Part shown: one piece after another, positions 7,272 through 63,842 of the stretch
How positions within the stretch are numbered: the first letter of the stretch is position 1
How the letters are laid out: every line of letters begins with the position of its first letter
IMG/VR virus record: IMGVR_UViG_3300020578_000006
Span: 1 to 64,000 of that record
Reading direction: 5' to 3' (one strand)
Length of the DNA: 64,000 nucleotides
The notes under the pieces: model-generated
Databases searched by the model: none
Seen by the model: only the letters and a program-made list of their open reading frames with translations
Told to the model about the DNA's origin: nothing
Program-made: the position numbers and the translations under genes

Positions 7272-7347
7272 TGGTGGGCGTACAAGGATTTGAACCTTGG
7301 ACCAAGGCATTATGAGTGCCCTGCTCTGACCGCTGAGCTATACGCCC
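7272..7347 (-). tRNA. tRNA with CAU anticodon (Ile2 or elongator Met), encoded CCA
   Basis: GGGCGUA acceptor; loop CUCAUAA; 3' ACCA. Confidence 0.9.
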
Positions 7348-11860: not shown

Positions 11861-12546
11861 ACACCTGTCCAACGATAAGTCAGATTAGAAATTTTATGGC
11901 AAATCTTTTGAATTAGTTTAGAAGAGAAGAATACAAAAGGATTATAAATTTCCTTTACAATTGGATAATACCATTTTGCTCTAAAAACATTTCGCTTTGC
12001 AATTGATGTAGAGAGCTTTTGTTCAAATTCTTCGTTTTGCTTCTTTCTTGCTTTAGCAGTTTTCTCTGATTCAATCTCGGCTTTAATAAGATTTATCTTT
12101 TTTACCTTACCCTCAACAGCAATAACATTAAACTCAATATCTAGATATCTACCTCCTACTTCCTCATAGGTGTAAATACCAAAAGTACTAGTAGTCTTTA
12201 CTTTAACCTTAACTGGCTTCCTTTCATCTACAGTCTTTAGAGTAGGATGCTTTTTATTAATTTGTCTTTGAATAAATTTAAAATACAAACGCTCTAAAAA
12301 AGACCTATTATCTGTCCAACCGGAAAAAGGAGGGGTATAGGGTATCTTCTTACCGGTCGGTCTATACTCTGTAACAGATATTTGACCGGAAGAATCAATT
12401 GTAAAGGAAGATAATGTATTATCTAAATCTTTTGTCTGGAACTCGGAGGGTACTTGCTTATTATTATTCTTCAAAAAAGAAGATACTTCTTTTGGAAGAG
12501 AAGGAAGCTTTAAGTTTTCTATAACTACTGTGTCGAACATACCCAT
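11857..12546 (-). CDS. conserved hypothetical phage protein (MGMFD family)
   Basis: MGMFDTV...FQTKDLD; start revised from 12585. Confidence 0.75.
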   Translation of the reverse strand: MGMFDTVVIENLKLPSLPKEVSSFLKNNNKQVPSEFQTKDLDNTLSSFTIDSSGQISVTEYRPTGKKIPYTPPFSGWTDNRSFLERLYFKFIQRQINKKHPTLKTVDERKPVKVKVKTTSTFGIYTYEEVGGRYLDIEFNVIAVEGKVKKINLIKAEIESEKTAKARKKQNEEFEQKLSTSIAKRNVFRAKWYYPIVKEIYNPFVFFSSKLIQKICHKISNLTYRWTGV

Positions 12547-12601
12547 AATATATATTATAAGAAATATGTGGAATATCAATAACATTTTATAAATTATTGA
12601 T

Positions 12602-12883
12602 ATGAAAGTGACCTTTACTCAGCCTGACAAAAGAGATAATAAAATACCTTTTTCCGAATTAAAGGTAGGAGATGTTTTCACCATAGCTGACCCAAAAATG
12701 TCTAAGGTCACATGCTATATGAAGACGAAGGTTAGCAAATATTATACAGCTTCTAATCTAGATTGTATTAACCTAGAAACTGGAGAGATATCTATATTTT
12801 CAGATACTAAAAAAGAAGTTATATCTGTAGATCAGTTATTTGTTTACAAAGTAAATGCTGAGATTAATGTAAAGGTTGATTAA
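12602..12883 (+). CDS. hypothetical protein
   Basis: 93 aa ORF, divergent from 12546 gene. Confidence 0.7.
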   Translation: MKVTFTQPDKRDNKIPFSELKVGDVFTIADPKMSKVTCYMKTKVSKYYTASNLDCINLETGEISIFSDTKKEVISVDQLFVYKVNAEINVKVD

Positions 12884-13614
12884 GGTTCTAAGGGATACCA
12901 TTTCTTAGAATCGGTTAGTTCGTGATATTCTAGAATACTAACACTACCGTTTAAGAACGCAACAATAGCATTATCGTTATATCTGGCTGAAATATAGCCC
13001 GTACTCTTTGGGTTACTTCTTGGATCATATTTGGATTTACTTTTAGGTATATCAACATAATAAAACCCTTCAAACCTCTCCCCCACGGCCATACTTCTTG
13101 ATGAAACAAACGCTATCGTTTGAGAAGGCTTTGTAACCTGGACTAATGATGAAGCAATTCTATTCTGATATTGCTTACCTTCATAATCATTTCCACCTAG
13201 ATAGATATTAAGACCAAAAGAAGGAAGCACACTTACAAGGTATGTCTGTGTTAAGCCTCCTTGTTTTTTGATATATCTGGCCGCCTCATTCACTAAAGTA
13301 CATCCATAAAAATCGTAGTTAAAGTAAGGAGCAAGTCTCCAAGGCCATCGGTGTGATTCATGACTCTCTTCACCGCCAATTTGCTTACCATTTATATCAA
13401 ACGCGGTACCATTAAGATCATAACTCTTCATTAGTAAATTATTATTATCACTACTATAAAGATTGTATGCGGTTATTAAATTTTTTATAGCACTAACCTC
13501 TTTTGCCTTTTTACCGGTATCATGCGCTTTACTCAAAACTGGAAGCCCAACACCTAGTAATATACCTATTACGCAAACTACTACCAAGCTCTCAACAAGC
13601 GTGAAAGCTTTCAT
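12880..13614 (-). CDS. prepilin-type N-terminal cleavage/methylation domain protein (PVC-type, H-X9-DG-like C-terminus)
   Basis: MKAFTLVESLVVVCVIGILLGVGLPVLSKA; HRWPW..APY; ARYNDNAIVAFLNGSV. Confidence 0.85.
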   Translation of the reverse strand: MKAFTLVESLVVVCVIGILLGVGLPVLSKAHDTGKKAKEVSAIKNLITAYNLYSSDNNNLLMKSYDLNGTAFDINGKQIGGEESHESHRWPWRLAPYFNYDFYGCTLVNEAARYIKKQGGLTQTYLVSVLPSFGLNIYLGGNDYEGKQYQNRIASSLVQVTKPSQTIAFVSSRSMAVGERFEGFYYVDIPKSKSKYDPRSNPKSTGYISARYNDNAIVAFLNGSVSILEYHELTDSKKWYPLEP

Positions 13615-14327
13615 TTTCTATTTAAAAACCATGTAATAAAAACAACCCCCATAGCGGCTATTAAAAATTCAAATGTAGATGGCTCAGGTATAATTGATAC
13701 ATTAGGGTGAAGAATTGGATCAGAATATTCTAATGAATAAAATTGTGCCGTTGTACCTTCAACGCTAGAATATGTTCCAATAAGCCCTATACCAAAATTA
13801 GTAAGAGGATCTATTTTCCATTGATTAAGAGCCTGGGTAATATTAAAGGATATCTCTCCAGATTGAATAAAAGTTACACTATCTAGAGTAGGTCTGTTTA
13901 AGAGATTAGTATTATACCAACTAAGAGGATCAGAAGCAAATTCTATATTTGAAAAACTATCTCCTAAGGCCACAGCCTTAATTGTAAAGGTCACTCCCGA
14001 AGTCAAATAAGAATATGTTGGGGGGCCTTGATAACCTGGTACCACAGTTCCAGGTACTCTGAATCTTTGAAGATTGAGTTTAAGTAGACCGGTACTGCCT
14101 AGCTCATAATTTGTAATATCATTAACCTCAACACCTCCCACATTGAAATGATATTGATAAGGGCTGCCAGCCTGTTGATTGTTAACACCTACAAAGAGAG
14201 GGGTTCTGGTTGAATTAAATGTTCCGTAATAAAGATAGTAATCAGCATCAGTAGATACGGCCAAGTTAACAGCATGACAGGCTGCACTAAGAAGCAGTGA
14301 TAATATAATTGTAATTAGTTTGTTCAT
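13611..14327 (-). CDS. PEP-CTERM sorting-domain secreted protein
   Basis: N-terminal signal peptide; C-terminal IPEPSTFEFLIAAMGVVFITWFLNRK. Confidence 0.9.
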   Translation of the reverse strand: MNKLITIILSLLLSAACHAVNLAVSTDADYYLYYGTFNSTRTPLFVGVNNQQAGSPYQYHFNVGGVEVNDITNYELGSTGLLKLNLQRFRVPGTVVPGYQGPPTYSYLTSGVTFTIKAVALGDSFSNIEFASDPLSWYNTNLLNRPTLDSVTFIQSGEISFNITQALNQWKIDPLTNFGIGLIGTYSSVEGTTAQFYSLEYSDPILHPNVSIIPEPSTFEFLIAAMGVVFITWFLNRK

Positions 14328-14333
14328 AAGATT

Positions 14334-14405
14334 TCGCGGGGGTCGGATTTGAACCGACGATCTCCTGGTTATGAGCCAGACGAGTTACCACTTCTCCACC
14401 CCACA
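14334..14405 (-). tRNA. trnfM: initiator tRNA-fMet(CAU)
   Basis: Near-identical to bacterial fMet tRNA (GGGGUGGAG...CUCAUAA...GUCGGUUCAAAUCCG); U1.G72; anticodon stem UCUGG/CCAGG. Confidence 0.9.
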
Positions 14406-14436
14406 ATATATATATTAATATATATTAAATAATACA

Positions 14437-14904
14437 ATGAAAAGAATAGAAGATGTTATTTTGGAAGCATCTACAGAGACAAAAGCTAAGTTGTATGTAC
14501 CGGCAAAGAAAGCTTTCGAAGCCCCAGATACAGGAGTAACAATCAATAAGCCAGCCGCATATAGAGTAATTAAAGATTGTGCTGAAACAACATTGCTCTT
14601 TTTACCTATAGAAATCTTTCTTAAATTTAAATCTCCAACTCAAGCGTTAAAGGGAAAATTTTCTAGAGAGCAAGTAATTGATCTCTATAACAGAACAACA
14701 ACAGATTCTGTTGCTAAGATTCTCTTTCAAACAATACTAGATACTTGCCCTAAAGCTCCCCCGCAATTAACCCCTACAAAAGCTGCTATAATAACAGATG
14801 TTGATATAGATGATCCTTACGACACATATGGAGACAATACACCCGCTCAAAGTGCTGAGACATCTAAATCGTTAGTTGATATAATTGTTTCGGCTTACTC
14901 TTAA
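14437..14904 (+). CDS. late hypothetical protein (MKRIEDVILE)
   Basis: TAAATA 5 nt upstream; I-L-E motif near the N-terminus. Confidence 0.75.
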   Translation: MKRIEDVILEASTETKAKLYVPAKKAFEAPDTGVTINKPAAYRVIKDCAETTLLFLPIEIFLKFKSPTQALKGKFSREQVIDLYNRTTTDSVAKILFQTILDTCPKAPPQLTPTKAAIITDVDIDDPYDTYGDNTPAQSAETSKSLVDIIVSAYS

Positions 14905-15635: not shown

Positions 15636-16286
15636 ATGGTTTCTTACAGACAGTTTATTAAAGAGGCTAATTTCAATGTTAATACAGGACGGGGAATTGT
15701 AGGGCCTGGAACAAAGAGAGGTACAAATCAGCAGCAACCGTATTACCCAGTACAAACATCATCACAAATACAAAGAACACAGCAACCACGTGCTTACTCA
15801 CCTACACAACAAGTTGCTCCGTCAGTGACTCAGCGTAATATAGCAACGACATCTTATCCTGTTCAAACTACCGCACCAACACAGCCTCAACAAACCGCTA
15901 CTGGGAAGAATGGACAGCTAACACAAAAGGAATTAAAACTTGTAGGCAAGTATAACGCTGGTCCATCTGGTAAGAGGCAATGGTATACTAATAATGCATT
16001 TTTAAGTCCGAGAGCTGCAGATGCTTTTCTTGCCGCGCAACAAGCCTACGGAAGACCGTTTCCAATTAATAGTGCTTATAGAAATTTAGAACATCAAAGA
16101 GGTCTATCTGGTGAGGGGCATAAAGTAGTAGGAAGAGCTGGAACCTCTAGACATGGTTTAGGAATGGCAATAGATATTCAGCCTAATACACCTCATTATA
16201 ACTGGTTCAAACAGAATGGGCCGCAATTTGGATGGCATTTTGCCTCTATACCTGGTGATCCTTATCATTTTGAGTTTAGAGGTTGA
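15636..16286 (+). CDS. peptidase M15 (VanY-like) with capsid-targeting-like N-terminus
   Basis: SAYR, SRHGLGMAIDI, DPYHFEF zinc motifs; MVSYRQFIKEA start; Q/T/P-rich linker; late promoter. Confidence 0.85.
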   Translation: MVSYRQFIKEANFNVNTGRGIVGPGTKRGTNQQQPYYPVQTSSQIQRTQQPRAYSPTQQVAPSVTQRNIATTSYPVQTTAPTQPQQTATGKNGQLTQKELKLVGKYNAGPSGKRQWYTNNAFLSPRAADAFLAAQQAYGRPFPINSAYRNLEHQRGLSGEGHKVVGRAGTSRHGLGMAIDIQPNTPHYNWFKQNGPQFGWHFASIPGDPYHFEFRG

Positions 16287-16316: not shown

Positions 16317-16622
16317 ATGAATAAACTACTTGCCTCACTTGTAGTTGGCCTTGCGCTAACTACTATCGCGTTGGCCGATTCTGGTACCTGTACTCCCTGT
16401 GATGACAGTGATTGGACAGTCGCGCGTGGCTTTGCCGCAGTGGGCGACCTTCTGGTAGTTAGACCTCTGGGAACCGCCGCGACAATAGGTGGTTTTGGTC
16501 TATTTGCAGTTGCGTCCCCATTTGCTGCTATGGCTGATGCAACAGATGAAGTATTTGATACGCTCGTTCAAGAGCCTGGCGAATATACGTTTGTTCGCGA
16601 TCTTGGCGATTTCAGTCGCTAA
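16317..16622 (+). CDS. secreted/membrane protein of bacterial type
   Basis: Signal peptide; DLLVVRPLG...P.EYTFVR.LG pattern; higher GC; TATAAATA 4 nt upstream. Confidence 0.75.
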   Translation: MNKLLASLVVGLALTTIALADSGTCTPCDDSDWTVARGFAAVGDLLVVRPLGTAATIGGFGLFAVASPFAAMADATDEVFDTLVQEPGEYTFVRDLGDFSR

Positions 16623-23569: not shown

Positions 23570-23640
23570 GGTTTGGGGTTATCCTTTTTTCTTTTATGAA
23601 AGAAAACCCCGCTTATTTTCGAATATGATACCGGGCATTT

Positions 23641-23731
23641 GGCCCGGTAGTTTAATGGTAAAACAGCAGACTTATACTCTGTATTATCGCCAGATTAGCG
23701 TAAAATGTAGGTTCGACTCCTACCCGGGCTA
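23641..23731 (+). tRNA. trnI: tRNA-Ile(UAU) with long variable arm
   Basis: GGCCCGG/CCGGGCU acceptor, GCAGA-CUUAUAC-UCUGU, 24-nt variable region with CGC/GCG stem, GUAGG-UUCGACU-CCUAC T-arm. Confidence 0.85.
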
Positions 23732-23735
23732 GTGT

Positions 23736-26053: not shown

Positions 26054-29000
26054 TTATCTCACAAATATATTTACAAATTGTATAGCATGACATTCAGTGC
26101 CTGCCTGAAACCCGGGGCCACATATAGATGCACCAGTACTAAACCCTGTCCAACCTTGATGACCACTCCAATTCCACGTAAACATTCTGTTTGAGTCATT
26201 ACTTAATCCGTTAGTTTGGGTATCTGGCCAAAGTGCATTATTATAGGTATAGATTGGCGATCCACCTGCCCATAAATTTGGGTATCTAGAATATGTTAGT
26301 GGTAAGATAGCTATTGTTGTTGAGTCTGGAGCACGACCAACTGGATTATTAAAACTAAATCCACAGTTATTTGGATTGTTTAGTACAGATTGATCTTTTT
26401 CCGATAAAATTGGACAAAAATCAGCCCATCCAAATACGTATCTACTCCCCGGACTTCTTAGATAAAAACTATCATTAAGCTGTACTCGGTTAATAATCAT
26501 TTCCATATTATTCCAAGTATCTTCACCTTTAATACCGTGAATTACACCCGAAGGTAAATAACGAGGAACAAAATTACTAGTTACAGCAGCAAGGTTGGCT
26601 TGTCTCAAGCCTTCTTTATAGTTTCCGCCCCCAGCATTTGCAAACCATTGTGTGTGCCATTTTACTGTAACGCTGCTCCCGGCGCCCTCTCTTCCAACAG
26701 CAACTAACACCCATCCACCTCCAAAACTTGTCATGTCACAATAAATTGACGTGGGCTCTCCGTCAACCCATAAGAAATAATCTCCACTTGGAGCCCCTGG
26801 TCTAGCTGCTAAAATTTCCCTTGCATTATTTGCAGGATTTTCAATAGTACCAAGAAGTCCTCTGCTCTTATTATTAGTATACTTATACCTTACAATCACT
26901 ATACCCTTTCCACCGTTTCCACCCGTACTATAAGCGTGCGTCCCTCCACCGCCACCACCGCCTGTATTTGCTGCACCATTTCCCCCCCGTATACTAGATC
27001 CACTGTACCCGGCCTCACCAGAACTATCCCACATCCACCTCCAGTTAGAGTTAGGGCTTGAGTAATTTATCTGACTGCTTCCGCTTTGTCCACCTGCTCC
27101 ACCCTGGCTACCATAACTATCATCATACCTACTCCCTCCACCGCCTCCGCCCATTCCTGCAGGCCCAGATCCCGGTCCAGTATAGTTTGCCGCTCCTCCT
27201 CCACCTCCAAAACATTTCTCAATTCCTAGAATATAAGAATAATACCCATCCCCCCCTATACCAGACTGAATACTCGCTCGACCATTTGCAAGTGAATTTC
27301 CATCAGTGGTAGGAGAATTAAAAGATGCTCCCCCACCAGAACCTCCATAATAATCTACTGTACCTGCAGAAGCCCCTCCAGAAGTACCCTGACCGGCAAT
27401 ATTTTTACCCCCATATCTTATACCCACTACATTATGGGTGGCAGAGGCCCCTCCCCCGGAACCACCTCTAGTTGGATTTGGACCAATATATCTTTCCCCG
27501 CTTGTCCCGGTAGATCTATAATGCCCGCTTTGAGCGCCGCCACCCCCTCTTGCCTGTATAATTTGTTGATTAGAATTTATAAATTGCCATGTACCAGGGG
27601 TTAGAAACTCGTGAATTGTATATTGAACACCCCCTATAACTCTTTGATATATCCTATCACCACCGTGTGCACGCTGTACACCCTGATATCTCACTACAAC
27701 AATACCAGAACCACCAAATCCTCCTCTATTATTTGAGTTATAATGTGCACTTCCTCCACCACCACCTCCGGTGTTTTCCCCTGCATCACCTCCGGGTGTA
27801 TTACCACCATCTCCCCCACCTGGACTACCAACATTATATGCAGAGCCACCACCCTGGCCGCGCAAACCGCCCCCAGAGCCCCCACCTCCTCCGCCTATAC
27901 CACCGTTTCCTGATTCTCTTGAATGTCCAGCGCCGCCTCCTCCTCCGGCCCAATAATAATTATCACCTGTTATGTTATTTAAGATGCCAGGGCCCCCATC
28001 TGATCTAGCTGTGGAATCAACGCCTTGACCGCCTGCACCTCCTCCTCCACCAGAATAATACTGAGGTCCACCACGACCACCTCTAAATCCTTGACCTGCG
28101 GTCCCAGCGCCTCCATCTCTAAAAGAAGCACTACCATCACTGTACCCAGAAGCCCCTCCACCAGATCCTCCGGCACATCCTGCTGGGCCAGGATTATACT
28201 GGTAATATGAACTACCTCCCCGGCCACCCCCTATAGCAGTAAAAGTAGCAAATTGTGAGTTGCCCCCGTTACCAGCGGCAATATTAAACTGATGGGTAGA
28301 ACTTTGTTGGAATGTACCGCCTGCAGGTGCACCAGCACCCCCTGCTCCTACTACAACAGTATACGATTGACCAGCTATAATCGGTAATGTACCAGATAAT
28401 ACTCCACCGCCTCCGCCTCCACCACCCATATCCATACCTCCACCGCCACCACCTGCTACAACCAGATAGTCTACGCTAGTTACATTAGTTTGACCAGCAG
28501 ACAGAGGGGTTGTAAGATAGAGAAAAGAATCACCCCCAACACTACCTGTAGGAGGAGGGCCGTTATAAGGGCCAGGTGAACCGGCTCCACCGGCTCCTAC
28601 AACTACTGTACAATTACCTGTTAAAACAGTAGCACATTGATTTTCAATAACTCCACCGCCTCCGCCTCCACCACCCATATCCATACCTCCACCACCTCCA
28701 CCTGCTACCACTGTATACCAAATTTTATTTCCTCTAGAAGGATCAGTACCTAATTGTGTGATATTAAAAGTACCTGAATTTTCAAATACATGTACTCTAT
28801 TATCTCCAATATCATATATAACATCACCCCCGGTGGCAATCATTCCTTGAGGGAAAGTAATTCCTGATGTTATTGTCAATCTACTTCTATTAGGTAGTTC
28901 TTCTACTGTACACTCCCCTTGAATGGTTCTATTTCTAGCTGTTGCTCCATCTAAATTATCTCCATAACCATTTACCCACCAATTAGTTGTCATAAATTGA

Positions 29001-29566
29001 TGTTGATTACTACCACCATACCTTCTCGCCTGAAGACCTATTCTACCATTTGTAGTTCCCCAGCTTGGTACTATTCTTTCAAAATGCCAGGTTTTTTCAT
29101 CATACAAATCAGAGTTTGAAAACTTACAAATTTCAGTATTATTAGCATAAAATATCCAATGAGAGATAGTATGGGAGTTATAATAACCGTGTCCTATTTT
29201 TGCAGTAAATCTTAAATAACTATTCACAGAGGTAGGTGTAAAATCTACATACGCACCTGCAAACCAATCAAAACTATTTGTTAGATAGTAAGCACCGCCT
29301 GTATAATAAGAAATGACTCTATTATTACAGAAATTTAAATCTTCAGAGATGGCCAAGCTTCCAGTACTATCATAAATTAAAGGTCTGATATTGCCTTGTG
29401 TATCTAAATTTTGTACTGATTGTGGGTTAATACTTAAATTTGCAAATTTACTATTTGTTAGCGCTTTGTCCGCAATTTTTAACCCAGTAACAGATAGATT
29501 AGTAAATGCATTATTTGCAATAGCATTCACATCAACATTAGAATTTACTATTTTTGTTAATGGCAT
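26054..29566 (-). CDS. glycine-rich tail fibre/adhesin with C-terminal fibrinogen-like domain
   Basis: 1170 aa; repeated VVAGGGGGG...G.GG.GIVVVRY modules; SGDYFL...IYCDMTSFGGGWVLVA. Confidence 0.85.
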   Translation of the reverse strand: MPLTKIVNSNVDVNAIANNAFTNLSVTGLKIADKALTNSKFANLSINPQSVQNLDTQGNIRPLIYDSTGSLAISEDLNFCNNRVISYYTGGAYYLTNSFDWFAGAYVDFTPTSVNSYLRFTAKIGHGYYNSHTISHWIFYANNTEICKFSNSDLYDEKTWHFERIVPSWGTTNGRIGLQARRYGGSNQHQFMTTNWWVNGYGDNLDGATARNRTIQGECTVEELPNRSRLTITSGITFPQGMIATGGDVIYDIGDNRVHVFENSGTFNITQLGTDPSRGNKIWYTVVAGGGGGGMDMGGGGGGGGVIENQCATVLTGNCTVVVGAGGAGSPGPYNGPPPTGSVGGDSFLYLTTPLSAGQTNVTSVDYLVVAGGGGGGMDMGGGGGGGGVLSGTLPIIAGQSYTVVVGAGGAGAPAGGTFQQSSTHQFNIAAGNGGNSQFATFTAIGGGRGGSSYYQYNPGPAGCAGGSGGGASGYSDGSASFRDGGAGTAGQGFRGGRGGPQYYSGGGGGAGGQGVDSTARSDGGPGILNNITGDNYYWAGGGGGAGHSRESGNGGIGGGGGGSGGGLRGQGGGSAYNVGSPGGGDGGNTPGGDAGENTGGGGGGSAHYNSNNRGGFGGSGIVVVRYQGVQRAHGGDRIYQRVIGGVQYTIHEFLTPGTWQFINSNQQIIQARGGGGAQSGHYRSTGTSGERYIGPNPTRGGSGGGASATHNVVGIRYGGKNIAGQGTSGGASAGTVDYYGGSGGGASFNSPTTDGNSLANGRASIQSGIGGDGYYSYILGIEKCFGGGGGAANYTGPGSGPAGMGGGGGGSRYDDSYGSQGGAGGQSGSSQINYSSPNSNWRWMWDSSGEAGYSGSSIRGGNGAANTGGGGGGGTHAYSTGGNGGKGIVIVRYKYTNNKSRGLLGTIENPANNAREILAARPGAPSGDYFLWVDGEPTSIYCDMTSFGGGWVLVAVGREGAGSSVTVKWHTQWFANAGGGNYKEGLRQANLAAVTSNFVPRYLPSGVIHGIKGEDTWNNMEMIINRVQLNDSFYLRSPGSRYVFGWADFCPILSEKDQSVLNNPNNCGFSFNNPVGRAPDSTTIAILPLTYSRYPNLWAGGSPIYTYNNALWPDTQTNGLSNDSNRMFTWNWSGHQGWTGFSTGASICGPGFQAGTECHAIQFVNIFVR
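28401..28693. repeat. 44-nt exact direct repeat (28401..28444 and 28650..28693)
   Basis: ACTCCACCGCCTCCGCCTCCACCACCCATATCCATACCTCCACC occurs twice; encodes GGGMDMGGGGGGGGV. Confidence 0.9.
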
Positions 29567-39316: not shown

Positions 39317-39520
39317 TCAATAATACTTCCACTTATTATGACTAATCTTTGATGCTAACTTTCTTTTGGCTGATGGTTTTAAATAAGATCTTAAAAGCTT
39401 TACTTCTTCAAGAATACCACATCTTTTTACGGCATTACTAAACTGTTTTAGTTTTTTGTCAAAATATAACTTATTGGAAGACTTCTTCTTATCGAGAACG
39501 ACTTCACAGTTAATGATCAT
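39317..39520 (-). CDS. rpsU: ribosomal protein bS21 homologue
   Basis: KLKQFSNAVKRCGILEEVKLLRSYLKPSAKRK matches the bS21 core; TAAATA 4 nt upstream. Confidence 0.8.
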   Translation of the reverse strand: MIINCEVVLDKKKSSNKLYFDKKLKQFSNAVKRCGILEEVKLLRSYLKPSAKRKLASKISHNKWKYY

Positions 39521-42651: not shown

Positions 42652-44466
42652 ATGCCTGAGTACGGAAATTCTGATTCTGGACGTGAATCGACATTTGGTC
42701 GTTCGTTAATGAGTTATATTAACTCTAAGCTTCCTTATCAGAGCTATACATCTATTGATACTATAAGTAAACTAAATCCCAAATTTAAAGTATTTCAAGA
42801 TACAGGCAGTAAGAGAACAGAAGCACTAGCCAGACAAAGCATTAGCAGTAATACTGAATATAATAGCTTAGACCCATCCGGCATTATTGGTCTAGATAAC
42901 AATTTCACCCAATACATGTATGCAAATGTGCAACATGACAAAGTATCTAGATTAAGAGACTACAGAACAATGGCATCTTTTTCTGAAGTAGCCGATGCGC
43001 TAGATGAAATATGTGATGATGCAATAAACAAAGATTCAAAAGGCAAAGTAGTTCATGCTAAGTTTCTAGATCTAGATTTAAATGACAAAGACACTACAGT
43101 TCTAGAAGAAGAGTTTCAAAAATATATTCAACATTTTGATTTGTCCCATAAAGGGTGGGAATATTTTAGAACACTACTAGTTGATGGTGAGTTATACTTT
43201 GAACATATTATCCACAAGCAATACGAGGATGAAGGAATATTAGGAGTTATAACTGTACCTAACGAATTTGTTGATCCTATTTTTGGCAATGTACAGAATA
43301 TGATGATTAAGGGCTTCTTGTTAAGAAAGCCAGTTTTTGACAAAAACAACCCTACCAAGATATTGGAATATAAGCTTGTTCCAATGGACAAAAATCAAAT
43401 AACTTATATTAACTCTGGTATATGGAATGAGAACAAGACAATAAGACTTCCGTTCATAGAGAACGCAAGAAGAGCATATAGGCAGATTAGTCTATTAGAA
43501 GATGCGGTCGTAATTTATAGGTTGGCACGAGCACCTGCGCGTTTAATCTTCAATGTAGATGTTGGCAATATGCCTGCACCAAAAGCAGAAGCGTATATGC
43601 GTAAATTAATGAACCAATATTGGTCATCTAAGAGTTTTGATGCGCAGCAAGGCGGAGGGGCTCTTAAAAAATATAACCCACAAAGTATTTTAGATAATTT
43701 CTGGTTTGCAAAGCGCGCTGGTTCTGAAGGTACAGATGTAAGACAATTAGAAGGTGCAAATCAAGCTTGGGGGCTAGAGGAAATGAACTATTTCTTAAAG
43801 AAACTTTATAAGAGCTTAAAGGTACCAGTATCCAGACTTAATGCTGAAACTGGCTACAAAGATGATATGAACATTCTTCGTGAGGAATTAAAATTTGCTA
43901 AATTTATTGTTAGAATGCAGCAGCAATTTGCTGAAGGCTTAAAGAATGGTTTTGTAACGCATTTAAAGCTTAGAAAGCTTTGGGAAAAATTTGATCTTAA
44001 GGAAACTAACATTGATATTGAGTTTAATGTACCAATTAACTTCTTTGAGATGAGAGAGGCACAAAAACAGGAGATCAAATCAAAGACATTCGGTGACATA
44101 ATTCAATCAGCTGATAATATTAGTAAGACATATGCATTAAAGAAATACATGGATTGGACAGATGTAGAAATTCTTGCAAATAGAGAATTTATGAGAAAAG
44201 ATATGGCATTTAGCTGGGAATTAGAGCAAATTAAAGCTGGAGGCCCTAATTGGAAAGAAAATGCTTTAGCGGGTGTTGCTCCAGCAGAAGGTGGTGAAGT
44301 TGGTGGTGCAAGTGTTGGTGGTGGAGCCGCAAGTACATTACCGCCTGCTTTTGGACCTACCCCGGCTGGTGGACCAGAAGGTGGAGTTCCTGCTGAAGGC
44401 GGGCCTGCTCCAGCAGAGGGTGCACCGGGCCCTGCGGCCGGTGGGGCACCACCCCCTACCGGTTAA
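42652..44466 (+). CDS. gp20: T4-like portal vertex protein
   Basis: YRTMA...EVADALDEIC, FRTLLVDGELYF, LLEDAVVIYRLARAPARLIFNVDVGNMP, SILDNFWFAKR, EELKFAKFI; TATAAATA upstream. Confidence 0.97.
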   Translation: MPEYGNSDSGRESTFGRSLMSYINSKLPYQSYTSIDTISKLNPKFKVFQDTGSKRTEALARQSISSNTEYNSLDPSGIIGLDNNFTQYMYANVQHDKVSRLRDYRTMASFSEVADALDEICDDAINKDSKGKVVHAKFLDLDLNDKDTTVLEEEFQKYIQHFDLSHKGWEYFRTLLVDGELYFEHIIHKQYEDEGILGVITVPNEFVDPIFGNVQNMMIKGFLLRKPVFDKNNPTKILEYKLVPMDKNQITYINSGIWNENKTIRLPFIENARRAYRQISLLEDAVVIYRLARAPARLIFNVDVGNMPAPKAEAYMRKLMNQYWSSKSFDAQQGGGALKKYNPQSILDNFWFAKRAGSEGTDVRQLEGANQAWGLEEMNYFLKKLYKSLKVPVSRLNAETGYKDDMNILREELKFAKFIVRMQQQFAEGLKNGFVTHLKLRKLWEKFDLKETNIDIEFNVPINFFEMREAQKQEIKSKTFGDIIQSADNISKTYALKKYMDWTDVEILANREFMRKDMAFSWELEQIKAGGPNWKENALAGVAPAEGGEVGGASVGGGAASTLPPAFGPTPAGGPEGGVPAEGGPAPAEGAPGPAAGGAPPPTG

Positions 44467-45775: not shown

Positions 45776-46094
45776 TTTAGAAACTTTTAAGAAATATAAC
45801 CAGCTTGGGGTTAGACGCAGCTACAAGCCCACTAAAAACCGGATAGAAAAATTTAAATATAATAGCGAATGGGAATCTGATCCTGACCAAAATGTATTTA
45901 CACTTAGAGACTATAAATGTTGTTATATAACAATAATGAAAAATAAGCAAGGCAAATACCGCCCAACAGTTAATGGTGCCTTCCTCTGTGACCATTTAGA
46001 TGTCATTGAATTACCAAAAGAATATGATACTTTAGAAGATGCCCAAAATAATGCATTTCTATTTGTAGACACAGTAACTGGAAAGAATAAATAA
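45765..46094 (+). CDS. hypothetical protein
   Basis: 109 aa ORF. Confidence 0.6.
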   Translation: MNPNLETFKKYNQLGVRRSYKPTKNRIEKFKYNSEWESDPDQNVFTLRDYKCCYITIMKNKQGKYRPTVNGAFLCDHLDVIELPKEYDTLEDAQNNAFLFVDTVTGKNK

Positions 46095-46114
46095 TAAATA
46101 CATGAGCGTGATTA

Positions 46115-46348
46115 ATGAATAGTTTTCATCTACAAGTTGTAGATCAAAGCGCCAGCGGATCACTTCATGTAAAGTTGATTATAGACTCTAAAGAGTCTGG
46201 CATTCTTTATTTGTCTCAAGAACAGTTAGATGCTATCAGTAGCGGTCTCAAATCATATTGCTATGAAAATGACCTTTCTTTTTCTACAGAAAATCCTTTC
46301 GATATTTCTTCCCTCGACGATCTTGAGGACGACGACGAACTAGAATAA
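46115..46348 (+). CDS. hypothetical acidic protein
   Basis: 77 aa ORF. Confidence 0.65.
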   Translation: MNSFHLQVVDQSASGSLHVKLIIDSKESGILYLSQEQLDAISSGLKSYCYENDLSFSTENPFDISSLDDLEDDDELE

Positions 46349-46356
46349 ATATATGT

Positions 46357-46563
46357 GTGAAAAAAACACATTCATCTGTTCGAGGATTCTGTGAAGAATT
46401 TTCTTCACACGTATACGAAGACACGGCCCATCATAGCATTCTTGTGAATGTAGAGCATGATTGGTTTAGTATTATGGATGGTGGGTTAAAAAAGCTCGGA
46501 TATAAATTAGTTCACATGACGGAAATGCCAAAAACACTTACCTGTGTGTATTATAAGGCTTGA
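46357..46563 (+). CDS. hypothetical protein
   Basis: 68 aa, TAAATA upstream. Confidence 0.6.
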   Translation: MKKTHSSVRGFCEEFSSHVYEDTAHHSILVNVEHDWFSIMDGGLKKLGYKLVHMTEMPKTLTCVYYKA

Positions 46564-46591
46564 TATTTCTTTTTTTTGTTTATAATTAGTT

Positions 46592-47335
46592 GTGCCTAAA
46601 ATACTGCTAGCGGACAAACCTGTTTTTGATGCAAAAGAACATACATATACTGACCCTAAGGATAAATTTCAGTATACTAGTGTAACAAGATGGGTAGAAA
46701 AATTCAAATATCCTTTTGATGAAATGGATATTGCTTATAGGGTAGCCAGAAGTCAAGATGTAACAGTTCAAACCGTTTTAGATCTATGGAAGAGGAAGAG
46801 GGATGATAGTGCAAATTTTGGAACAAAAGTACATAAAGTTTTAGAGGTATTTCTTAGTAAAAACAAAATTATTGACTCTCATTACAAGGAAATAATTAAC
46901 GGTTTTAAAGCGTTAAATATTTCCCTTGATACAAAGAGAAGTATGTTTGAAAACTTGGTATATAACAGGAAGTATGGTATTGCTGGAACCTCTGATATTA
47001 TTGTTCAAAACAAAGATAAAAAAACGTTTAATGTCTATGATTTTAAAACCAACAAGCAATTTAGATATACTTCTCCGTTTGGGCATCGAATGTTAAAGCC
47101 GCTAGAGCATTTTCCGTGCTCAGAGTACCATACATACTCCTTACAGCTAAGCATGTACGCATTTCTCTATAAGCTAATGTCTGGTCTAGAACCGTTAAGA
47201 TTAAAGATTTTTTGGTATGAACGCAAGGAGCCAGAAAATTATGAAAAAGTAGCCGGAAAATGGCATATTATCAATATTCCTTACATGGAAGAAGAAATAT
47301 TAAAATGCTTACACCATGAAGATGCTGAAGAATAG
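46592..47335 (+). CDS. PD-(D/E)XK exonuclease (Cas4-like)
   Basis: YTSVTR, FGTKVHKVLE, AGTSDII, VYDFKTN, QLSMYA. Confidence 0.88.
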   Translation: MPKILLADKPVFDAKEHTYTDPKDKFQYTSVTRWVEKFKYPFDEMDIAYRVARSQDVTVQTVLDLWKRKRDDSANFGTKVHKVLEVFLSKNKIIDSHYKEIINGFKALNISLDTKRSMFENLVYNRKYGIAGTSDIIVQNKDKKTFNVYDFKTNKQFRYTSPFGHRMLKPLEHFPCSEYHTYSLQLSMYAFLYKLMSGLEPLRLKIFWYERKEPENYEKVAGKWHIINIPYMEEEILKCLHHEDAEE

Positions 47336-47750
47336 AATTTCGTGGGAAGAGTATGCATTATTGTTAGCTCGTGAGGCTTCTAAGAGAAGTGAAGATCCTT
47401 TTAAAAAAGTTGGTGCATGTGCCCTTGGCTATAATAATAGGGTTTTAGGTATTGCTTATAATGGTCTTGTATCCGGTAAAAAAGTAAGCAATTCCTTTTG
47501 GCGCAATAGAGATAAAAGGCTACCTTATATTATTCATGCTGAACAGAATCTATTGAGTTTATTTAAAAGAGGCGAGGCAAGAATGATAGCTTGTACATTA
47601 TTACCGTGCTCTGATTGTGCACGACTAATATGTAGTTGGGAAATACCATTAGTATGTTATTTGGACGATTATAATAGAGATAGTGGTGCTATTGAAATAT
47701 TTAAATTTTACAATACGAGACTAAAAAAACTTAGTTTAACTGGAAAATAG
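47316..47750 (+). CDS. dCMP deaminase
   Basis: W..Y...LA.EASKRS.DP..KVGAC, HAEQN, PCSDC. Confidence 0.9.
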   Translation: MKMLKNRISWEEYALLLAREASKRSEDPFKKVGACALGYNNRVLGIAYNGLVSGKKVSNSFWRNRDKRLPYIIHAEQNLLSLFKRGEARMIACTLLPCSDCARLICSWEIPLVCYLDDYNRDSGAIEIFKFYNTRLKKLSLTGK

Positions 47751-47773
47751 TTTTCTAGACATAAATATGGTAT

Positions 47774-48517
47774 ATGGCCGTAGCAACAATTTCTGTTAAT
47801 TTCGCAACTTTATCTGACGCACGCGCTGGTACTAGTACAGTAACAAGTATCAATCCCAAGCAGTTAAAAGATTTATTTAATAGCGCCAATAACATGTACG
47901 ATATTAGCGTTAAGAGCATTACAACAAACGGTAACGTTACAATTAATGGCACGGTAAATGCCTCTGCAGGATATGCAGGTAATTTTGTTGCTTCTGGAAC
48001 AATATCAGGCACAGGCTGGGCTGGTAATCTTGGAGTTACCGGTAATATTTCTGCTACTCAAGGGTGGAACGGTAATTTAACGGTCACAGGTAGTATTTTT
48101 GCTTCTAACGGATATGCTGGTACCCTCTCGGTAACAGGTAATATTCAAGCCACCCAAGATATCATTGCATATTATTCTGATAAAAGATTAAAAAACATTA
48201 GCGGTAATATTTCTGGTGCTCTAGAAAAAGTAAACAAGCTAAACGGCATATATTATACTAATAATGATGTGGCAAACTCTTTTGGCTATAATGATACAGA
48301 AAACAAAGTCGGTTTAATAGCTCAAGAGGTGAAAGAAGTTTTACCAGAATCCGTAAAACTAGCTCCGTTTGATTCAGACGGAAATAGTAAGAGTATTTCC
48401 GGTCAAAATTATTTAACTGTTCAGTATGATAAGATTGTTCCTTTACTTGTTGAAGCAATAAAAGAGCTTACAGCAAAAGTTAAAGATTTAGAAGCATCTA
48501 AGACGTTGGAGAAGTAA
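47774..48517 (+). CDS. tail fibre with C-terminal intramolecular chaperone (peptidase S74-like)
   Basis: G.L.VTG.I.A repeats; SDKRLKNI...GLIAQEVKEVLPE...V.YDKIVPLLVEAIKEL; late promoter. Confidence 0.88.
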   Translation: MAVATISVNFATLSDARAGTSTVTSINPKQLKDLFNSANNMYDISVKSITTNGNVTINGTVNASAGYAGNFVASGTISGTGWAGNLGVTGNISATQGWNGNLTVTGSIFASNGYAGTLSVTGNIQATQDIIAYYSDKRLKNISGNISGALEKVNKLNGIYYTNNDVANSFGYNDTENKVGLIAQEVKEVLPESVKLAPFDSDGNSKSISGQNYLTVQYDKIVPLLVEAIKELTAKVKDLEASKTLEK

Positions 48518-48518
48518 C

Positions 48519-49280: not shown

Positions 49281-49314
49281 TCTGGATTATTTTGTTATTA
49301 AGCTAATATAATAT

Positions 49315-52432: not shown

Positions 52433-52471
52433 TAATAAATAATTTAGTCAAAAACAATTTTATTTCAATGT

Positions 52472-54015: not shown

Positions 54016-54016
54016 T

Positions 54017-56150: not shown

Positions 56151-56200
56151 AAAATATTTATACAGTAGTATAAAAAATAAAAACTACAGGTAAATAAAGC

Positions 56201-57592: not shown

Positions 57593-57648
57593 AAACGTAT
57601 TTAGATGTATATCATTGATTACAACTAGGTTTATATTATAATTAATTT

Positions 57649-61436: not shown

Positions 61437-61443
61437 TTAATAT

Positions 61444-63839: not shown

Positions 63840-63842
63840 TAT

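What the first reader, a model, noticed from the sequence alone, without database searches (positions are those of the whole stretch)
12880..14405. Phage-borne PEP-CTERM plus prepilin-type gene pair beside tRNA-fMet
Seen: a signal-peptide protein ending IPEPST-TM-RK is coupled (ATGA overlap) to a type-IV-pilin-like protein with an H-X9-DG-like C-terminal motif, immediately downstream of tRNA-fMet. Known: PEP-CTERM proteins are exosortase substrates, and this pairing is abundant in Verrucomicrobia/Planctomycetes. No exosortase is in the window. Inference: points to a PVC host, and the phage may feed its own cargo into host exosortase and pilus/T2SS systems to remodel the cell surface (e.g. receptor masking).
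Basis: partly seen in the sequence, partly recalled or inferred. Interest (0 to 1): 0.65.

Follow-up and report, generated by a model that had tools for sequence, protein, structure and literature searches.

The report
Phage-borne PEP-CTERM lectin plus pseudopilin pair
A 230-kb T4-like lake phage carries a two-gene cassette, apparently copied from Verrucomicrobia/Planctomycetes-type bacteria, for a sugar-binding surface protein and a pilin-like protein; the enzymes expected to mature both are missing from the phage, which points to the host group and suggests the phage alters the surface of the infected cell.

Summary
On the minus strand a 238-aa protein (signal peptide, CBM96-like jelly roll, IPEP-TM-RK tail; Pfam PEP-CTERM above threshold) overlaps by ATGA a 244-aa prepilin-type protein. 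A tRNA-Met(CAT) ends 5 nt upstream.

The window is the start of a complete 229.7-kb T4-like phage from lake metagenomes. Independent contigs bridge every junction, so this is not a chimera. The whole genome has no exosortase and no prepilin peptidase. It does hold a second cluster with four more PEP-CTERM signals, a second pseudopilin and a secreted GH13 amylase.

The pair is conserved in well over 60 metagenomic sequence clusters. It sits at two different genomic positions in related phages, so the tRNA adjacency is incidental. Phage pseudopilins form one clade nested among bacterial ones. The nearest cellular loci carry the same coupled pair and look verrucomicrobial, and related genomes hold 3-7 exosortases and 10-38 PEP-CTERM proteins.

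Best reading: a host-derived envelope cassette that depends on host exosortase and prepilin peptidase. A PVC host is likely but unproven. The H-X9-DG motif is only family-like (Y-X9-NG here). The pairing recurs in PVC genomes but is not abundant. Receptor masking is untested, and no RNA data were found.

The parts
14333..14406 (-). tRNA-Met (anticodon CAT), initiator-like, no encoded CCA. Its 3' end lies 5 nt upstream of the PEP-CTERM gene's ATG. It is adjacent only in this phage and its near-identical copies, so it is not part of the conserved cassette.
   Evidence: ARAGORN; Rfam RF00005, 60 bits; sequence read; absent next to the pair in L097-L102, L007 and L009.
13611..14327 (-). Gene 1: 238-aa secreted protein made of a signal peptide, a CBM96/DNRLRE-like beta-jelly-roll and a PEP-CTERM sorting signal.
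   Evidence: ORF; AlphaFold2 pLDDT 86; 107 homologous clusters; profile search finds bacterial proteins of 220-260 aa with the same architecture.
14271..14327 (-). Sec-type signal peptide (residues 1-19, cleavage after CHA).
   Evidence: Read from the sequence; N-terminal helix 2-15 in the model. No signal-peptide predictor was available.
13698..14270 (-). CBM96-like carbohydrate-binding-module fold (residues about 20-210).
   Evidence: Foldseek PDB: 8wab chondroitin-sulfate-binding CBM, E 5e-8; 7vbo alginate-binding CBM, E 1e-3. ESM-Atlas CBM96 clusters at TM 0.60-0.65. Feature search finds CBM96+PEP-CTERM clusters at 0.97. NCBIfam DNRLRE scores 20.3 bits, below its cut-off of 34.
13614..13691 (-). 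PEP-CTERM sorting signal (IPEPST, hydrophobic helix, NRK).
   Evidence: PF07589: 22.8 bits against 20.7; 23.3 bits. P214, E215 and P216 are at least 90% conserved in the family alignment.
13611..13614 (-). ATGA stop/start overlap coupling gene 1 to gene 2.
   Evidence: Stop/start overlaps also occur in phage relatives, by gene coordinates, and in bacterial locus L103.
12880..13614 (-). Gene 2: 244-aa prepilin-type (pseudopilin-like) protein of a subfamily related to DUF1559/H-X9-DG proteins.
   Evidence: ORF; AlphaFold2 pLDDT 90.5, with a 50-residue N-terminal helix and a globular head. Best PDB matches are type IV pilins and T2SS pseudopilins at Z 4-5. Atlas structural neighbours are N_methyl/SBP_bac_10 clusters at TM 0.91-0.92.
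13543..13611 (-). Prepilin-type N-terminal cleavage/methylation motif (MKA|FTLVE..., Glu at +5).
   Evidence: TIGR02532: 16.8 against 16.3; 20.3 bits.
12946..12981 (-). C-terminal Y-X9-NG motif (residues 212-223). It occupies the columns that read H-X9-DG in some bacterial relatives.
   Evidence: Alignment A1. There is no HMM hit to TIGR04294 or PF07596.

Best explanation
This is a host-derived two-gene envelope cassette (a 'moron') carried by an uncultivated T4-like jumbo phage of lakes.

Gene 1 encodes a Sec-exported protein with a CBM96-type fold, so probably glycan-binding. Its C-terminal IPEP-TM-basic tail is the substrate signal of an exosortase. Gene 2, translationally coupled to it, encodes a pseudopilin of a DUF1559-related subfamily whose N-terminus is the substrate of a prepilin peptidase.

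The phage encodes neither enzyme. Both proteins can therefore mature only in a host that has an exosortase and a type II secretion or type IV pilus apparatus. That host is most likely a member of the PVC group, with Verrucomicrobiota the best candidate.

Shown:
- gene structure and domains;
- absence of the two processing enzymes from the phage genome;
- conservation of the cassette across a phage lineage, and its movement within those genomes;
- bacterial ancestry of the cassette, including the same coupled pair in bacteria.

Inferred:
- In the infected cell the lectin is released or anchored at the surface by host exosortase.
- The pseudopilin enters the host pseudopilus and acts as its partner or adaptor.
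- My committed guess for the outcome is that the lectin binds the cell's own acidic surface polysaccharide. This would mask it from further phage adsorption, both superinfection and loss of progeny on infected or lysed cells.
- Expression is probably late in relatives.
For: Phage identity: complete 229.7-kb virus record. T4-type portal at 27-32% identity to cultured T4-likes. Relatives place the pair next to the Portal_T4 and T4-gp15 genes.

Real junctions: contigs from a run not flagged as the source bridge 12485-12968, 13146-13851 and 13829-14612 at 100% identity. Two further IMG/VR contigs are collinear.

Domains.

Dependence on the host: no PF09721 and no PF01478 in the genome. Yet there are five PEP-CTERM signals and two prepilin motifs in two clusters. 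The P-E-P residues are at least 90% conserved across divergent phage copies.

Bacterial origin:
- Phage pseudopilins form one clade (99/96). It is sister to the bacterial L103/P0064 clade (97/95) and nested among bacterial sequences.
- L103 and L104 (GC 46-50%, against about 34% for the phage pair) carry the same CBM96-PEP-CTERM gene followed by the same pseudopilin. In L103 the two genes overlap by one base.
- L105 shows cellular neighbours.
- The L105 aminotransferase is 70% identical (747 bits) to Verrucomicrobiota and 52% (532 bits) to Planctomycetota.
- The five best-matching Verrucomicrobiota genomes each hold 3-7 exosortases and 10-38 PEP-CTERM proteins.
- Three of the five best-matching genomes hold pseudopilins of this subfamily, five loci in all. 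At three of those loci a PEP-CTERM gene lies within about 2.2 kb (coordinates).

Mobility as a unit: the pair lies in a variable region in the window, L097, L098 and L101. It lies between the portal and DUF366 genes in L007, L009 and L010.

Timing: in L097 and L101 an (N)ATAAATA motif starts 13 nt before the ATG of gene 1. That is the spacing seen for the portal and 22 other genes in this genome.
Against: - There is no direct host link: no CRISPR spacer, Hi-C or prophage evidence.
- Freshwater bS21-encoding jumbo myophages with the same GC content were assigned to Bacteroidetes (PMC9723584). This phage also encodes bS21 and barely uses Shine-Dalgarno motifs.
- No cellular homologue closer than about 48% identity was found. 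Only 5 of 401 sampled Verrucomicrobiota genomes matched the gene-1 profile, and only one over its full length.
- In phage relatives the tail is too degenerate to reach Pfam's threshold. NCBIfam TIGR02595 does not report the window copy. The tail could therefore act as a plain membrane anchor.
- Carbohydrate binding is inferred from fold alone. The CBM96 and DNRLRE HMMs are below threshold.
- The window copy has no late-type motif upstream; the tRNA sits there instead.
- No RNA evidence was found.
Confidence: 0.6

Rival explanations
1. Glycan-foraging auxiliary module. The CBM96 lectin and pseudopilin work with the phage's second cluster (four more PEP-CTERM signals, a second pseudopilin and a 1052-aa secreted GH13 amylase). 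Together they would capture and degrade external or periplasmic alpha-glucans or other polysaccharides through the host's T2SS, fuelling phage replication rather than masking receptors.
For: The second cluster at G000:C1 203.9-210.5 kb has, in one strand and order, PEP-CTERM proteins, a pseudopilin and a signal-peptide GH13. The closest solved structural matches of gene 1 are CBMs of polysaccharide-degrading enzymes. In Verrucomicrobiota, pseudopilins of this subfamily directly follow genes for large secreted proteins (L127, L128). From general knowledge, the archetypal T2SS (Pul) secretes a GH13 pullulanase.
Against: The two clusters lie about 190 kb apart. Their ectodomains are unrelated. 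The late-type promoter motif in relatives fits poorly with a metabolic role that would have to act early. No transporter or catabolic genes were seen beside the pair.
Confidence: 0.2
2. The genes are of PVC origin but the host is not PVC: for example Bacteroidota, as proposed for other freshwater bS21 jumbo phages, or another phylum with PEP-CTERM systems such as Cyanobacteria or Proteobacteria. In a host without a matching exosortase the tail would serve only as a C-terminal membrane anchor.
For: The genome has 35% GC, encodes bS21 and shows almost no Shine-Dalgarno use: 14-17% of genes against a background of 7-8%, with A-rich leaders. These traits match the Bacteroidetes-assigned phages in PMC9723584. 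The strongest portal matches by bit score and E-value are cyanophages. Tails in relatives fall below the PEP-CTERM threshold.
Against: - Five PEP-CTERM signals and two prepilin signals are kept in one genome.
- The P-E-P residues are conserved over many divergent copies.
- No T9SS C-terminal sorting domain and no psbA were found.
- All cellular relatives with a known phylum are PVC.
- Two sampled Verrucomicrobiota genomes also show no Shine-Dalgarno enrichment in a crude count, so that trait does not discriminate.
- The bS21 gene here lies on the same strand as its neighbours and the genome is 230 kb, unlike the 293-331-kb clades described.
Confidence: 0.2
3. Lysis accessory. The pair would be an inner-membrane-anchored periplasmic protein plus an envelope-targeted partner, encoded by overlapping late genes. 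It would act like a two-component spanin or otherwise help breach the PVC envelope at the end of infection.
For: The two genes overlap. The pseudopilin has a type-II membrane topology before cleavage. A late-type motif lies upstream in relatives. In the window and in L097, L098, L101 and L102 the pair lies near a conserved 101-aa membrane protein driven by a perfect TATAAATA. In the window it also lies near an M15 peptidase.
Against: The same coupled pair exists in bacterial chromosomes beside housekeeping genes. Both proteins have globular lectin or pilin folds rather than coiled-coil or lipoprotein spanin features. In L007 and L009 the pair is not near lysis-type genes.
Confidence: 0.07
4. 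Artefact: bacterial DNA mis-joined into a phage contig, or a chance motif match.
For: Both genes belong to bacterial families, and no GenBank phage has a homologue.
Against: - Contigs from independent runs bridge all junctions at 100% identity.
- The genes are collinear in two other IMG/VR records.
- The pair's GC matches the phage, not its bacterial relatives.
- The pair recurs in all 10 related phage contigs inspected.
- The motif scores exceed curated cut-offs, with no hits in control genomes.
Confidence: 0.02

Closest known systems
Small CBM96 (DNRLRE-type) + PEP-CTERM proteins of Verrucomicrobiota and Planctomycetota (ESM-Atlas clusters; bacterial hits P0195-P0220; P0190 in locus L103)
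   Same: Same architecture and size: signal peptide, a jelly roll of about 190 aa, then a P-E-P motif, a TM segment and a basic tail. The profile match covers the full length. P0190 is about 45% identical and is followed by the same pseudopilin.
   Different: The phage clade is a distinct, AT-rich sub-family. Its tail is degenerate (IPEP, with only one to three basic residues). It is encoded in a virus that has no exosortase.
DUF1559 / SBP_bac_10 (PF07596) and H-X9-DG (TIGR04294) prepilin-type proteins of Planctomycetes, Verrucomicrobia and Lentisphaerae
   Same: Prepilin N-terminus plus a globular head. Atlas structural neighbours carry these families (TM 0.73-0.92). More distant full-length relatives (L017, L021) pass PF07596. 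The C-terminal motif lies in the same columns.
   Different: The window protein and its close bacterial relatives do not hit either HMM. The motif here is Y-X9-NG. The function of the family is unknown; PMC10632474 calls it a large paralogous family of unknown function.
T2SS pseudopilins (GspG/PulG, GspH) and type IV pilins
   Same: N-terminal cleavage/methylation motif with Glu5. A long N-terminal helix plus an alpha-beta head. The best solved matches are PilA4, EpsG and PulG. Partial N-terminal HMM matches.
   Different: Matches are weak (Z 4-5) and the HMM hits cover only the N-terminal 60 residues, far below equivalog cut-offs. The head domain is larger. No secretion or pilus machinery genes lie nearby.
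Exosortase / PEP-CTERM sorting system (EpsH/XrtA; for example the flocculation protein PepA)
   Same: A C-terminal tripartite signal together with an N-terminal signal peptide, and several paralogous cargos in one genome.
   Different: The cargo genes are in a virus and the sortase must come from the host. No EPS biosynthesis genes lie beside the pair.
Phage 'moron' pilins (PHROG 3433) and CBM96 modules in phage tail proteins
   Same: phrog_3433 'pilin' matches the N-terminus. CBM96-like folds occur in tail-fibre and lyase proteins of Bacillus and Brevibacillus phages.
   Different: The PHROG match covers 36 residues only. The viral CBM96 modules sit inside large virion proteins, not in a small exported protein with a sorting tail. 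No GenBank phage holds a homologue of either gene.

Membership tests
PEP-CTERM sorting domain (PF07589 / TIGR02595) | HMM match above the curated threshold at the extreme C-terminus | tested here: met
   PF07589 scores 22.8 bits against 20.7 over residues 213-238, and 23.3 bits. Caveats: TIGR02595 is not reported at E<=1, and copies in phage relatives fall below the Pfam threshold.
PEP-CTERM sorting domain (PF07589 / TIGR02595) | Tripartite tail (P-E-P motif, hydrophobic helix, basic cluster) together with an N-terminal signal peptide | tested here: met
   IIPEPST, 17 hydrophobic residues, then NRK; N-terminal MNK, hydrophobic stretch, CHA|V. P-E-P is at least 90% conserved. The basic cluster is weak (R and K only).
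PEP-CTERM sorting domain (PF07589 / TIGR02595) | An exosortase encoded in the same genome | tested here: not met
   No PF09721 in the 229.7-kb phage genome at E<=1. The enzyme would have to be the host's. The Verrucomicrobiota genomes whose aminotransferase best matches the one flanking the bacterial pair locus have 3-7 each.
PEP-CTERM sorting domain (PF07589 / TIGR02595) | Actual cleavage or anchoring by an exosortase | not testable with these tools
   Needs expression in a host with and without its exosortase.
Prepilin-type (type IV pilin / T2SS pseudopilin) proteins | N-terminal cleavage/methylation motif with Glu at +5 | tested here: met
   TIGR02532 scores 16.8 against 16.3 and 20.3 bits. 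The motif reads A|FTLVE, with Ala at -1 as in many bacterial relatives. Pfam N_methyl scores only 13.1 against 21.2.
Prepilin-type (type IV pilin / T2SS pseudopilin) proteins | Pilin fold: a long N-terminal helix packed on an alpha-beta head | tested here: inconclusive
   The model has helix 6-56 plus a globular head, pLDDT 90.5. 22 of the top 25 VIA-align rows are pilins, pseudopilins or a pilus-assembly protein, but Z is only 2.5-5.1. Foldseek found nothing significant.
Prepilin-type (type IV pilin / T2SS pseudopilin) proteins | A prepilin peptidase and assembly machinery in the same genome | tested here: not met
   No PF01478 in the phage genome. These would have to be supplied by the host.
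DUF1559 / H-X9-DG proteins (PF07596, TIGR04294) | HMM match to PF07596 or TIGR04294 | tested here: not met
   No hit at E<=1, or at E<=10 for the C-terminal parts. More distant verrucomicrobial homologues (L017, L021) do pass PF07596.
DUF1559 / H-X9-DG proteins (PF07596, TIGR04294) | The H-X9-DG motif near the C-terminus | tested here: not met
   The window protein has Y212-X9-N222-G223. In the subfamily the first position is H, Y, F or W and the second is mostly DG. The protein is therefore a related subfamily, not a canonical member.
DUF1559 / H-X9-DG proteins (PF07596, TIGR04294) | Structural likeness to SBP_bac_10 proteins and restriction to PVC taxa | tested here: met
   Atlas neighbours reach TM 0.92 and 0.91 (N_methyl with or without SBP_bac_10, Planctomycetota) and 0.73 (SBP_bac_10, Lentisphaerota). 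In the GTDB scan the clear full-length hits are Planctomycetota and Verrucomicrobiota; one near-full-length hit carries no phylum label.
CBM96 / DNRLRE carbohydrate-binding module (PF24517, NF033679) | HMM match above threshold | tested here: not met
   NF033679 scores 20.3 bits against 34. PF24517 is not reported at E<=1.
CBM96 / DNRLRE carbohydrate-binding module (PF24517, NF033679) | The fold | tested here: met
   8wab at E 5e-8 (TM 0.52-0.71) and 7vbo at E 1e-3. CBM96 Atlas clusters at TM 0.60-0.65. Feature search scores 0.97.
CBM96 / DNRLRE carbohydrate-binding module (PF24517, NF033679) | Binding of an (acidic) polysaccharide | not testable with these tools
   Needs glycan arrays or binding assays with the purified ectodomain.
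T4-like (Straboviridae-type) phage | gp20-type portal and T4-type tail genes | tested here: met
   The portal at 42652-44466 is 27-32% identical to T4-like portals in 2584 records. The homologous genes in relatives carry Portal_T4 and T4-gp15_tss, at 55-82% identity to window genes.

The most novel reading that the evidence does not exclude
The pair is a 'cargo plus cognate pseudopilin' cassette. In PVC bacteria, DUF1559-type pseudopilins would be cargo-specific adaptors that hand particular secreted or PEP-CTERM proteins to the T2SS/exosortase route. That would explain the huge paralogous expansions of this family. A whole lineage of T4-like jumbo phages would have captured such cassettes at least twice (two clusters) to load their own lectins and an amylase onto the host's two sorting machines late in infection. 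The cassette would also be the first sequence marker for T4-like phages of freshwater Verrucomicrobiota.
Probability: 0.2. Interest if true: 0.75.

Novelty: new variant of a known kind. Interest (0 to 1): 0.55.

Why it matters
Phage genes for host-surface proteins (morons) are well known. Cargo that depends on an exosortase, paired with a DUF1559-type pseudopilin, was not found in any GenBank phage. It also does not appear in the searchable literature: 15 papers co-mention PEP-CTERM, exosortase and phage, and judged by their titles and abstracts none of the 14 listed is about phage cargo. No paper co-mentions DUF1559 and phage.

If the reading holds, it offers three things:
1. A practical host marker for a widespread, uncultivated lake phage lineage. 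PVC bacteria have few known phages, from general knowledge.
2. A natural experiment on what PEP-CTERM proteins and the enigmatic DUF1559 pseudopilins do, because the phage keeps only a minimal two-gene unit.
3. A case of a virus relying on two separate host protein-sorting enzymes at once.

Tried and rejected
- Complex prediction of the two ectodomains returned no verdict (ipSAE 0.01, controls not run). It is not evidence either way.
- Foldseek of the pseudopilin model against PDB gave nothing significant. Only VIA-align showed weak pilin matches.
- BLASTP of gene 1 against PEP-CTERM-like proteins that lie beside pseudopilin genes in planctomycete-like loci L013 and L011 was not significant (E about 0.5). 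The A2 profile also misses L013, L080 and L090. Only the sorting signal and the gene order are shared there, not the ectodomain.
- The second-cluster proteins are not paralogues of the pair. Only the N-terminal pilin helix aligns.
- A sample of 401 Verrucomicrobiota genomes gave 5 hits to the gene-1 profile, one of them full length and without an adjacent pseudopilin. No close donor was found.
- Five named PVC or other genomes had no P0190 homologue.
- Shine-Dalgarno usage was tried as a host discriminator. It is low in the phage but also not enriched in two sampled Verrucomicrobiota genomes, and the method is crude, so it is uninformative.
- There is no psbA, so this is not a classic cyanomyophage, and no T9SS sorting domain.
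- The 'moraphage' paper describes a different, Bacteroidota-linked lineage.
- The metaHi-C preprint mentions a Verrucomicrobiaceae-linked virus but nothing that can be tied to this phage.
- The sigma-70 promoter scan found fewer sites than in shuffled sequence.
- No RNA-seq run holds the locus.
- I could not obtain a Bacteroidota or Cyanobacteria genome handle. The aminotransferase and bS21 comparisons therefore lack non-PVC controls.
Full report
**1. What is in the sequence**

On the minus strand, ORF 13611..14327 (238 aa) is followed by ORF 12880..13614 (244 aa). The stop of the first and the start of the second share ATGA. A tRNA-Met(CAT) at 14333..14406 ends 5 nt before the first ATG. There is no Shine-Dalgarno motif in between.

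The first protein has a Sec-type leader and ends IIPEPST, a hydrophobic helix, then NRK. Pfam PEP-CTERM scores 22.8 bits against a gathering score of 20.7. The same model rings in none of 14 control genomes. NCBIfam's TIGR02595 does not report it.

The second protein begins MKA|FTLVE. It passes TIGR02532 (16.8 against 16.3; 20.3 bits) and matches the PHROG 'pilin' family over its N-terminus.

In an alignment with bacterial relatives these columns read (H/Y/F/W)-X9-(D/N)G, and several bacterial members have an exact H-X9-DG. Neither the TIGR04294 nor the PF07596 model hits the protein.

The tRNA is initiator-like: A11:U24, two of three G:C pairs in the anticodon stem, and a weak 1:72 pair. That is not proof. 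A second tRNA-Met(CAT) at 7272..7347 looks like an elongator or Ile2 type.

**2. What carries it**

The window is the first 64 kb of a 229,717-bp IMG/VR virus record that CheckV rates complete, with about 35% GC overall. Its portal (42652..44466) matches T4-type portals in 2584 phage records, but only at 27-32% identity. Relatives carry the Portal_T4 and T4-gp15 genes next to the pair. This is therefore a distant, uncultivated T4-like jumbo phage.

The locus occurs in more than 20 lake-water metagenome runs. In a run not flagged as the possible source, contigs at 100% identity bridge the pseudopilin/flank junction, the junction between the two genes, and the gene-1/tRNA/next-gene junction. Two other IMG/VR contigs are collinear over 12.7 kb. 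An assembly chimera is excluded.

The GC content around the pair (34-36%) matches the phage. Its bacterial relatives have 46-67% GC, so the genes are long-term residents of phage genomes.

**3. The rest of the genome changes the picture**

The whole genome has no exosortase and no prepilin peptidase. It does have a second cluster outside the window, at 203.9-210.5 kb on the minus strand. In order, this cluster holds:
- a 216-aa PEP-CTERM protein;
- a 522-aa ORF with two PEP-CTERM signals;
- a 217-aa PEP-CTERM protein;
- a 186-aa prepilin-type protein;
- a 1052-aa GH13 alpha-amylase with a signal peptide.

The ectodomains of this cluster are unrelated to those of the pair. The phage therefore keeps several different cargos that share only the two sorting signals. 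This is the strongest internal argument that its host provides both processing enzymes.

**4. Folds**

Both AlphaFold2 models are confident, with pLDDT 86 and 90.5.

The ectodomain of gene 1 is a beta-jelly-roll. It is closest to a chondroitin-sulfate-binding CBM (8wab, E 5e-8) and an alginate-binding CBM (7vbo). It also matches CBM96 clusters of the ESM Atlas at TM 0.60-0.65. The sequence-feature search gives CBM96+PEP-CTERM clusters whose commonest phyla are Verrucomicrobiota and Planctomycetota. The HMMs for DNRLRE and CBM96 stay below threshold. In viruses this fold is otherwise seen inside large tail or lyase proteins.

The pseudopilin model has a 50-residue N-terminal helix and a globular head. 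Its best solved matches are type IV pilins and T2SS pseudopilins, at weak Z values of 4-5. Its Atlas neighbours (TM 0.91-0.92) are N_methyl/SBP_bac_10 clusters of Planctomycetota, then Lentisphaerota and Verrucomicrobiota.

**5. Relatives**

The word-based search found 82 clusters for the pseudopilin and 107 for gene 1, all from metagenomes. Most are 53-95% identical, and the two lists share contigs. All 10 contigs I inspected are T4-like phage. No GenBank phage has either gene.

The pair sits at two different places:
- in a variable region near a conserved 101-aa membrane-protein gene (the window, L097, L098, L101, L102);
- between the portal and a DUF366 gene (L007, L009, L010). In the window these two genes are neighbours without the pair.

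The pair always moves as a unit. The tRNA is next to it only in this phage, so that adjacency is incidental.

More distant pseudopilin homologues (25-36% identity) lie in high-GC bacterial contigs beside housekeeping genes. A pattern scan of one genome per GTDB species found clear full-length relatives only in Planctomycetota (31%, E 1e-35) and Verrucomicrobiota; one further near-full-length hit carries no phylum label.

A full profile search with gene 1 found 211 proteins. They include many bacterial proteins of 220-260 aa with the same architecture and canonical VPEPS...RRRR tails.

**6. The same pair in bacteria**

The closest cellular homologues are about 45% identical for gene 1 and about 48% for the pseudopilin. 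They lie together in L103 and L104 (GC 46-50%). L103 has a CBM96 paralogue without the tail, then the PEP-CTERM protein, then the pseudopilin overlapping it by one base. L105 shows an aminotransferase and a glutaredoxin next door.

In a maximum-likelihood tree the phage pseudopilins form one clade (99/96). That clade is sister to the L103/P0064 clade (97/95) and nested among bacterial sequences. PF07596-positive verrucomicrobial proteins lie outside. The root is a midpoint, and the 'phage' labels rest on the contigs I inspected.

The L105 aminotransferase is 60-70% identical to 12 of 401 sampled Verrucomicrobiota genomes, best 747 bits. Its best match in 401 Planctomycetota is 52%, 532 bits. 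The five best-matching Verrucomicrobiota genomes each carry 3-7 exosortases and 10-38 PEP-CTERM proteins. Three of those five carry pseudopilins of this subfamily, five loci in all (E 1e-54 to 1e-65 against the family profile). At three of the five loci a PEP-CTERM gene lies within about 2.2 kb. I estimate the chance expectation at about 3-4% per locus from the counts.

More widely the linkage is rarer. Among 90 prepilin ORFs in 80 mostly PVC loci, only two (Pirellulales, Tepidisphaerales) have an adjacent same-strand PEP-CTERM gene. The pairing is recurrent, with the order conserved, but it is not 'abundant'.

**7. Mechanism**

Shown:
- two exported proteins with the substrate signals of exosortase and prepilin peptidase;
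- translational coupling;
- neither enzyme present in the phage;
- bacterial (PVC, probably verrucomicrobial) ancestry of the coupled pair;
- retention, and conservation of the P-E-P motif, across a diversified phage lineage.

Inferred:
- In the infected cell the lectin is exported by Sec, held by its C-terminal helix and processed by the host exosortase.
- The pseudopilin is cleaved by the host prepilin peptidase and enters a T2SS or T4P-like fibre.
- The two act together at the surface.

In two relatives an (N)ATAAATA motif starts 13 nt before the ATG of gene 1. In this genome the T4-late-like motif lies 12-14 nt before most of 23 start codons, and 19 nt before the portal's. This suggests late expression in those phages. 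The window copy lacks the motif.

My preferred outcome is masking of the cell's own acidic surface glycan against further adsorption. A glycan-foraging role together with the GH13 cluster is a serious alternative, and a lysis role a minor one. None of these has been tested. A complex prediction gave no verdict.

**8. Host**

The PVC inference rests on gene ancestry and on dependence on host enzymes.

Against it: freshwater bS21 jumbo myophages of the same GC content were assigned to Bacteroidetes (PMC9723584). This phage also has a bS21 gene and almost no Shine-Dalgarno use.

However, its bS21 lies on the same strand as its neighbours, and its genome is 230 kb against 293-331 kb. It has no T9SS-type sorting domain and no psbA. 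Two sampled Verrucomicrobiota genomes also show no Shine-Dalgarno enrichment in a crude count.

I put a PVC host at roughly 0.6-0.7, with Verrucomicrobiota ahead of Planctomycetota.

**9. Novelty**

The protein families are known. What is new is the setting: exosortase-dependent cargo and DUF1559-type pseudopilins as a mobile cassette in a T4-like phage lineage. Nothing comparable turned up in GenBank phages, in PHROGs beyond a 36-residue pilin match, or in the searchable literature.

I rate it a new variant of a known kind (a phage moron for a host-surface protein) and of moderate interest. Its main value is as a host marker and as a minimal system for studying PEP-CTERM and DUF1559 proteins.

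The reads tool was given 5,001 letters.

Noticed in passing
G000:C1:203915-210510 (outside the window; locus L111:915-7510, minus strand): A second envelope cluster. In order: a 216-aa PEP-CTERM protein, a 522-aa ORF with two PEP-CTERM signals, a 217-aa PEP-CTERM protein, a 186-aa prepilin-type protein and a 1052-aa GH13 alpha-amylase with a signal peptide. The ectodomains are unrelated to the pair in the window.
   Followed up: partly
L111:5295-6863 (G000:C1:208295-209863, minus strand): The 522-aa ORF is two [signal peptide - domain - PEP-CTERM] modules in one frame with no stop between them. The basic cluster of the first tail (MRTKNKTK) doubles as the N-region of the second signal peptide. 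This could be a fusion, read-through or internal initiation.
   Followed up: no
window 12588, 16305, 42633 and 20 further sites genome-wide: A T4-late-like motif ([TC]ATAAATA or TATAAAT[AT]) starts 12-14 nt upstream of most of 23 start codons, and 19 nt upstream of the portal's. Only 14-17% of genes have a Shine-Dalgarno core, against a background of 7-8%, and leaders are A-rich. Late mRNAs may be leaderless or nearly so.
   Followed up: partly
window 16317-16622 (+): A 101-aa protein with a signal peptide or TM segment plus a second hydrophobic segment, and no family hit. It is driven by a perfect TATAAATA. It is 57-68% conserved and lies beside the pair in L097, L098, L101 and L102. It may be a holin, spanin or third partner.
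   Followed up: partly
window 15636-16286 (+): A 216-aa protein with a Q/P/T-rich N-terminal half and a C-terminal M15/VanY-type peptidase domain (Peptidase_M15_3, 23.4 bits against 23.2). It is a likely endolysin.
   Followed up: no
window 39317-39520 (-): A phage-encoded ribosomal protein bS21 (TIGR00030, 24.3 bits, just under the 28.95 cut-off) inside the structural module, on the same strand as its neighbours. In the published Bacteroidetes-linked bS21 phages the gene is on the opposite strand.
   Followed up: partly
window 23640-23732 (+); also L097:128-219: tRNA-Ile(TAT) of 92-93 nt, unusually long for a class I tRNA (possible intron or insertion). The window holds eight tRNA genes in all.
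   Followed up: no
window 26054-29566 (-): A 1170-aa ORF in a GC-rich island (41-45% against about 33% around it) with strongly negative GC skew. It may be a fibre or other repetitive structural protein.
   Followed up: no
L127:21-1448 and L128:59-1447, followed by pseudopilin genes L127:1228-2340 and L128:1465-2346 (Verrucomicrobiota genomes G302, G251): In verrucomicrobial chromosomes, pseudopilins of the same subfamily directly follow genes for secreted proteins of about 470 aa that lack PEP-CTERM tails. This hints at general 'secreted cargo plus pseudopilin' cassettes.
   Followed up: no
window 46000-63900: A long run of genes of 220-460 aa at only 27-32% GC. It looks like a sugar- or glycan-modification block; relatives carry a Sulfotransfer_2 gene near the Peptidase_S74 gene whose window counterpart is 47774-48517. 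It was not annotated here.
   Followed up: no
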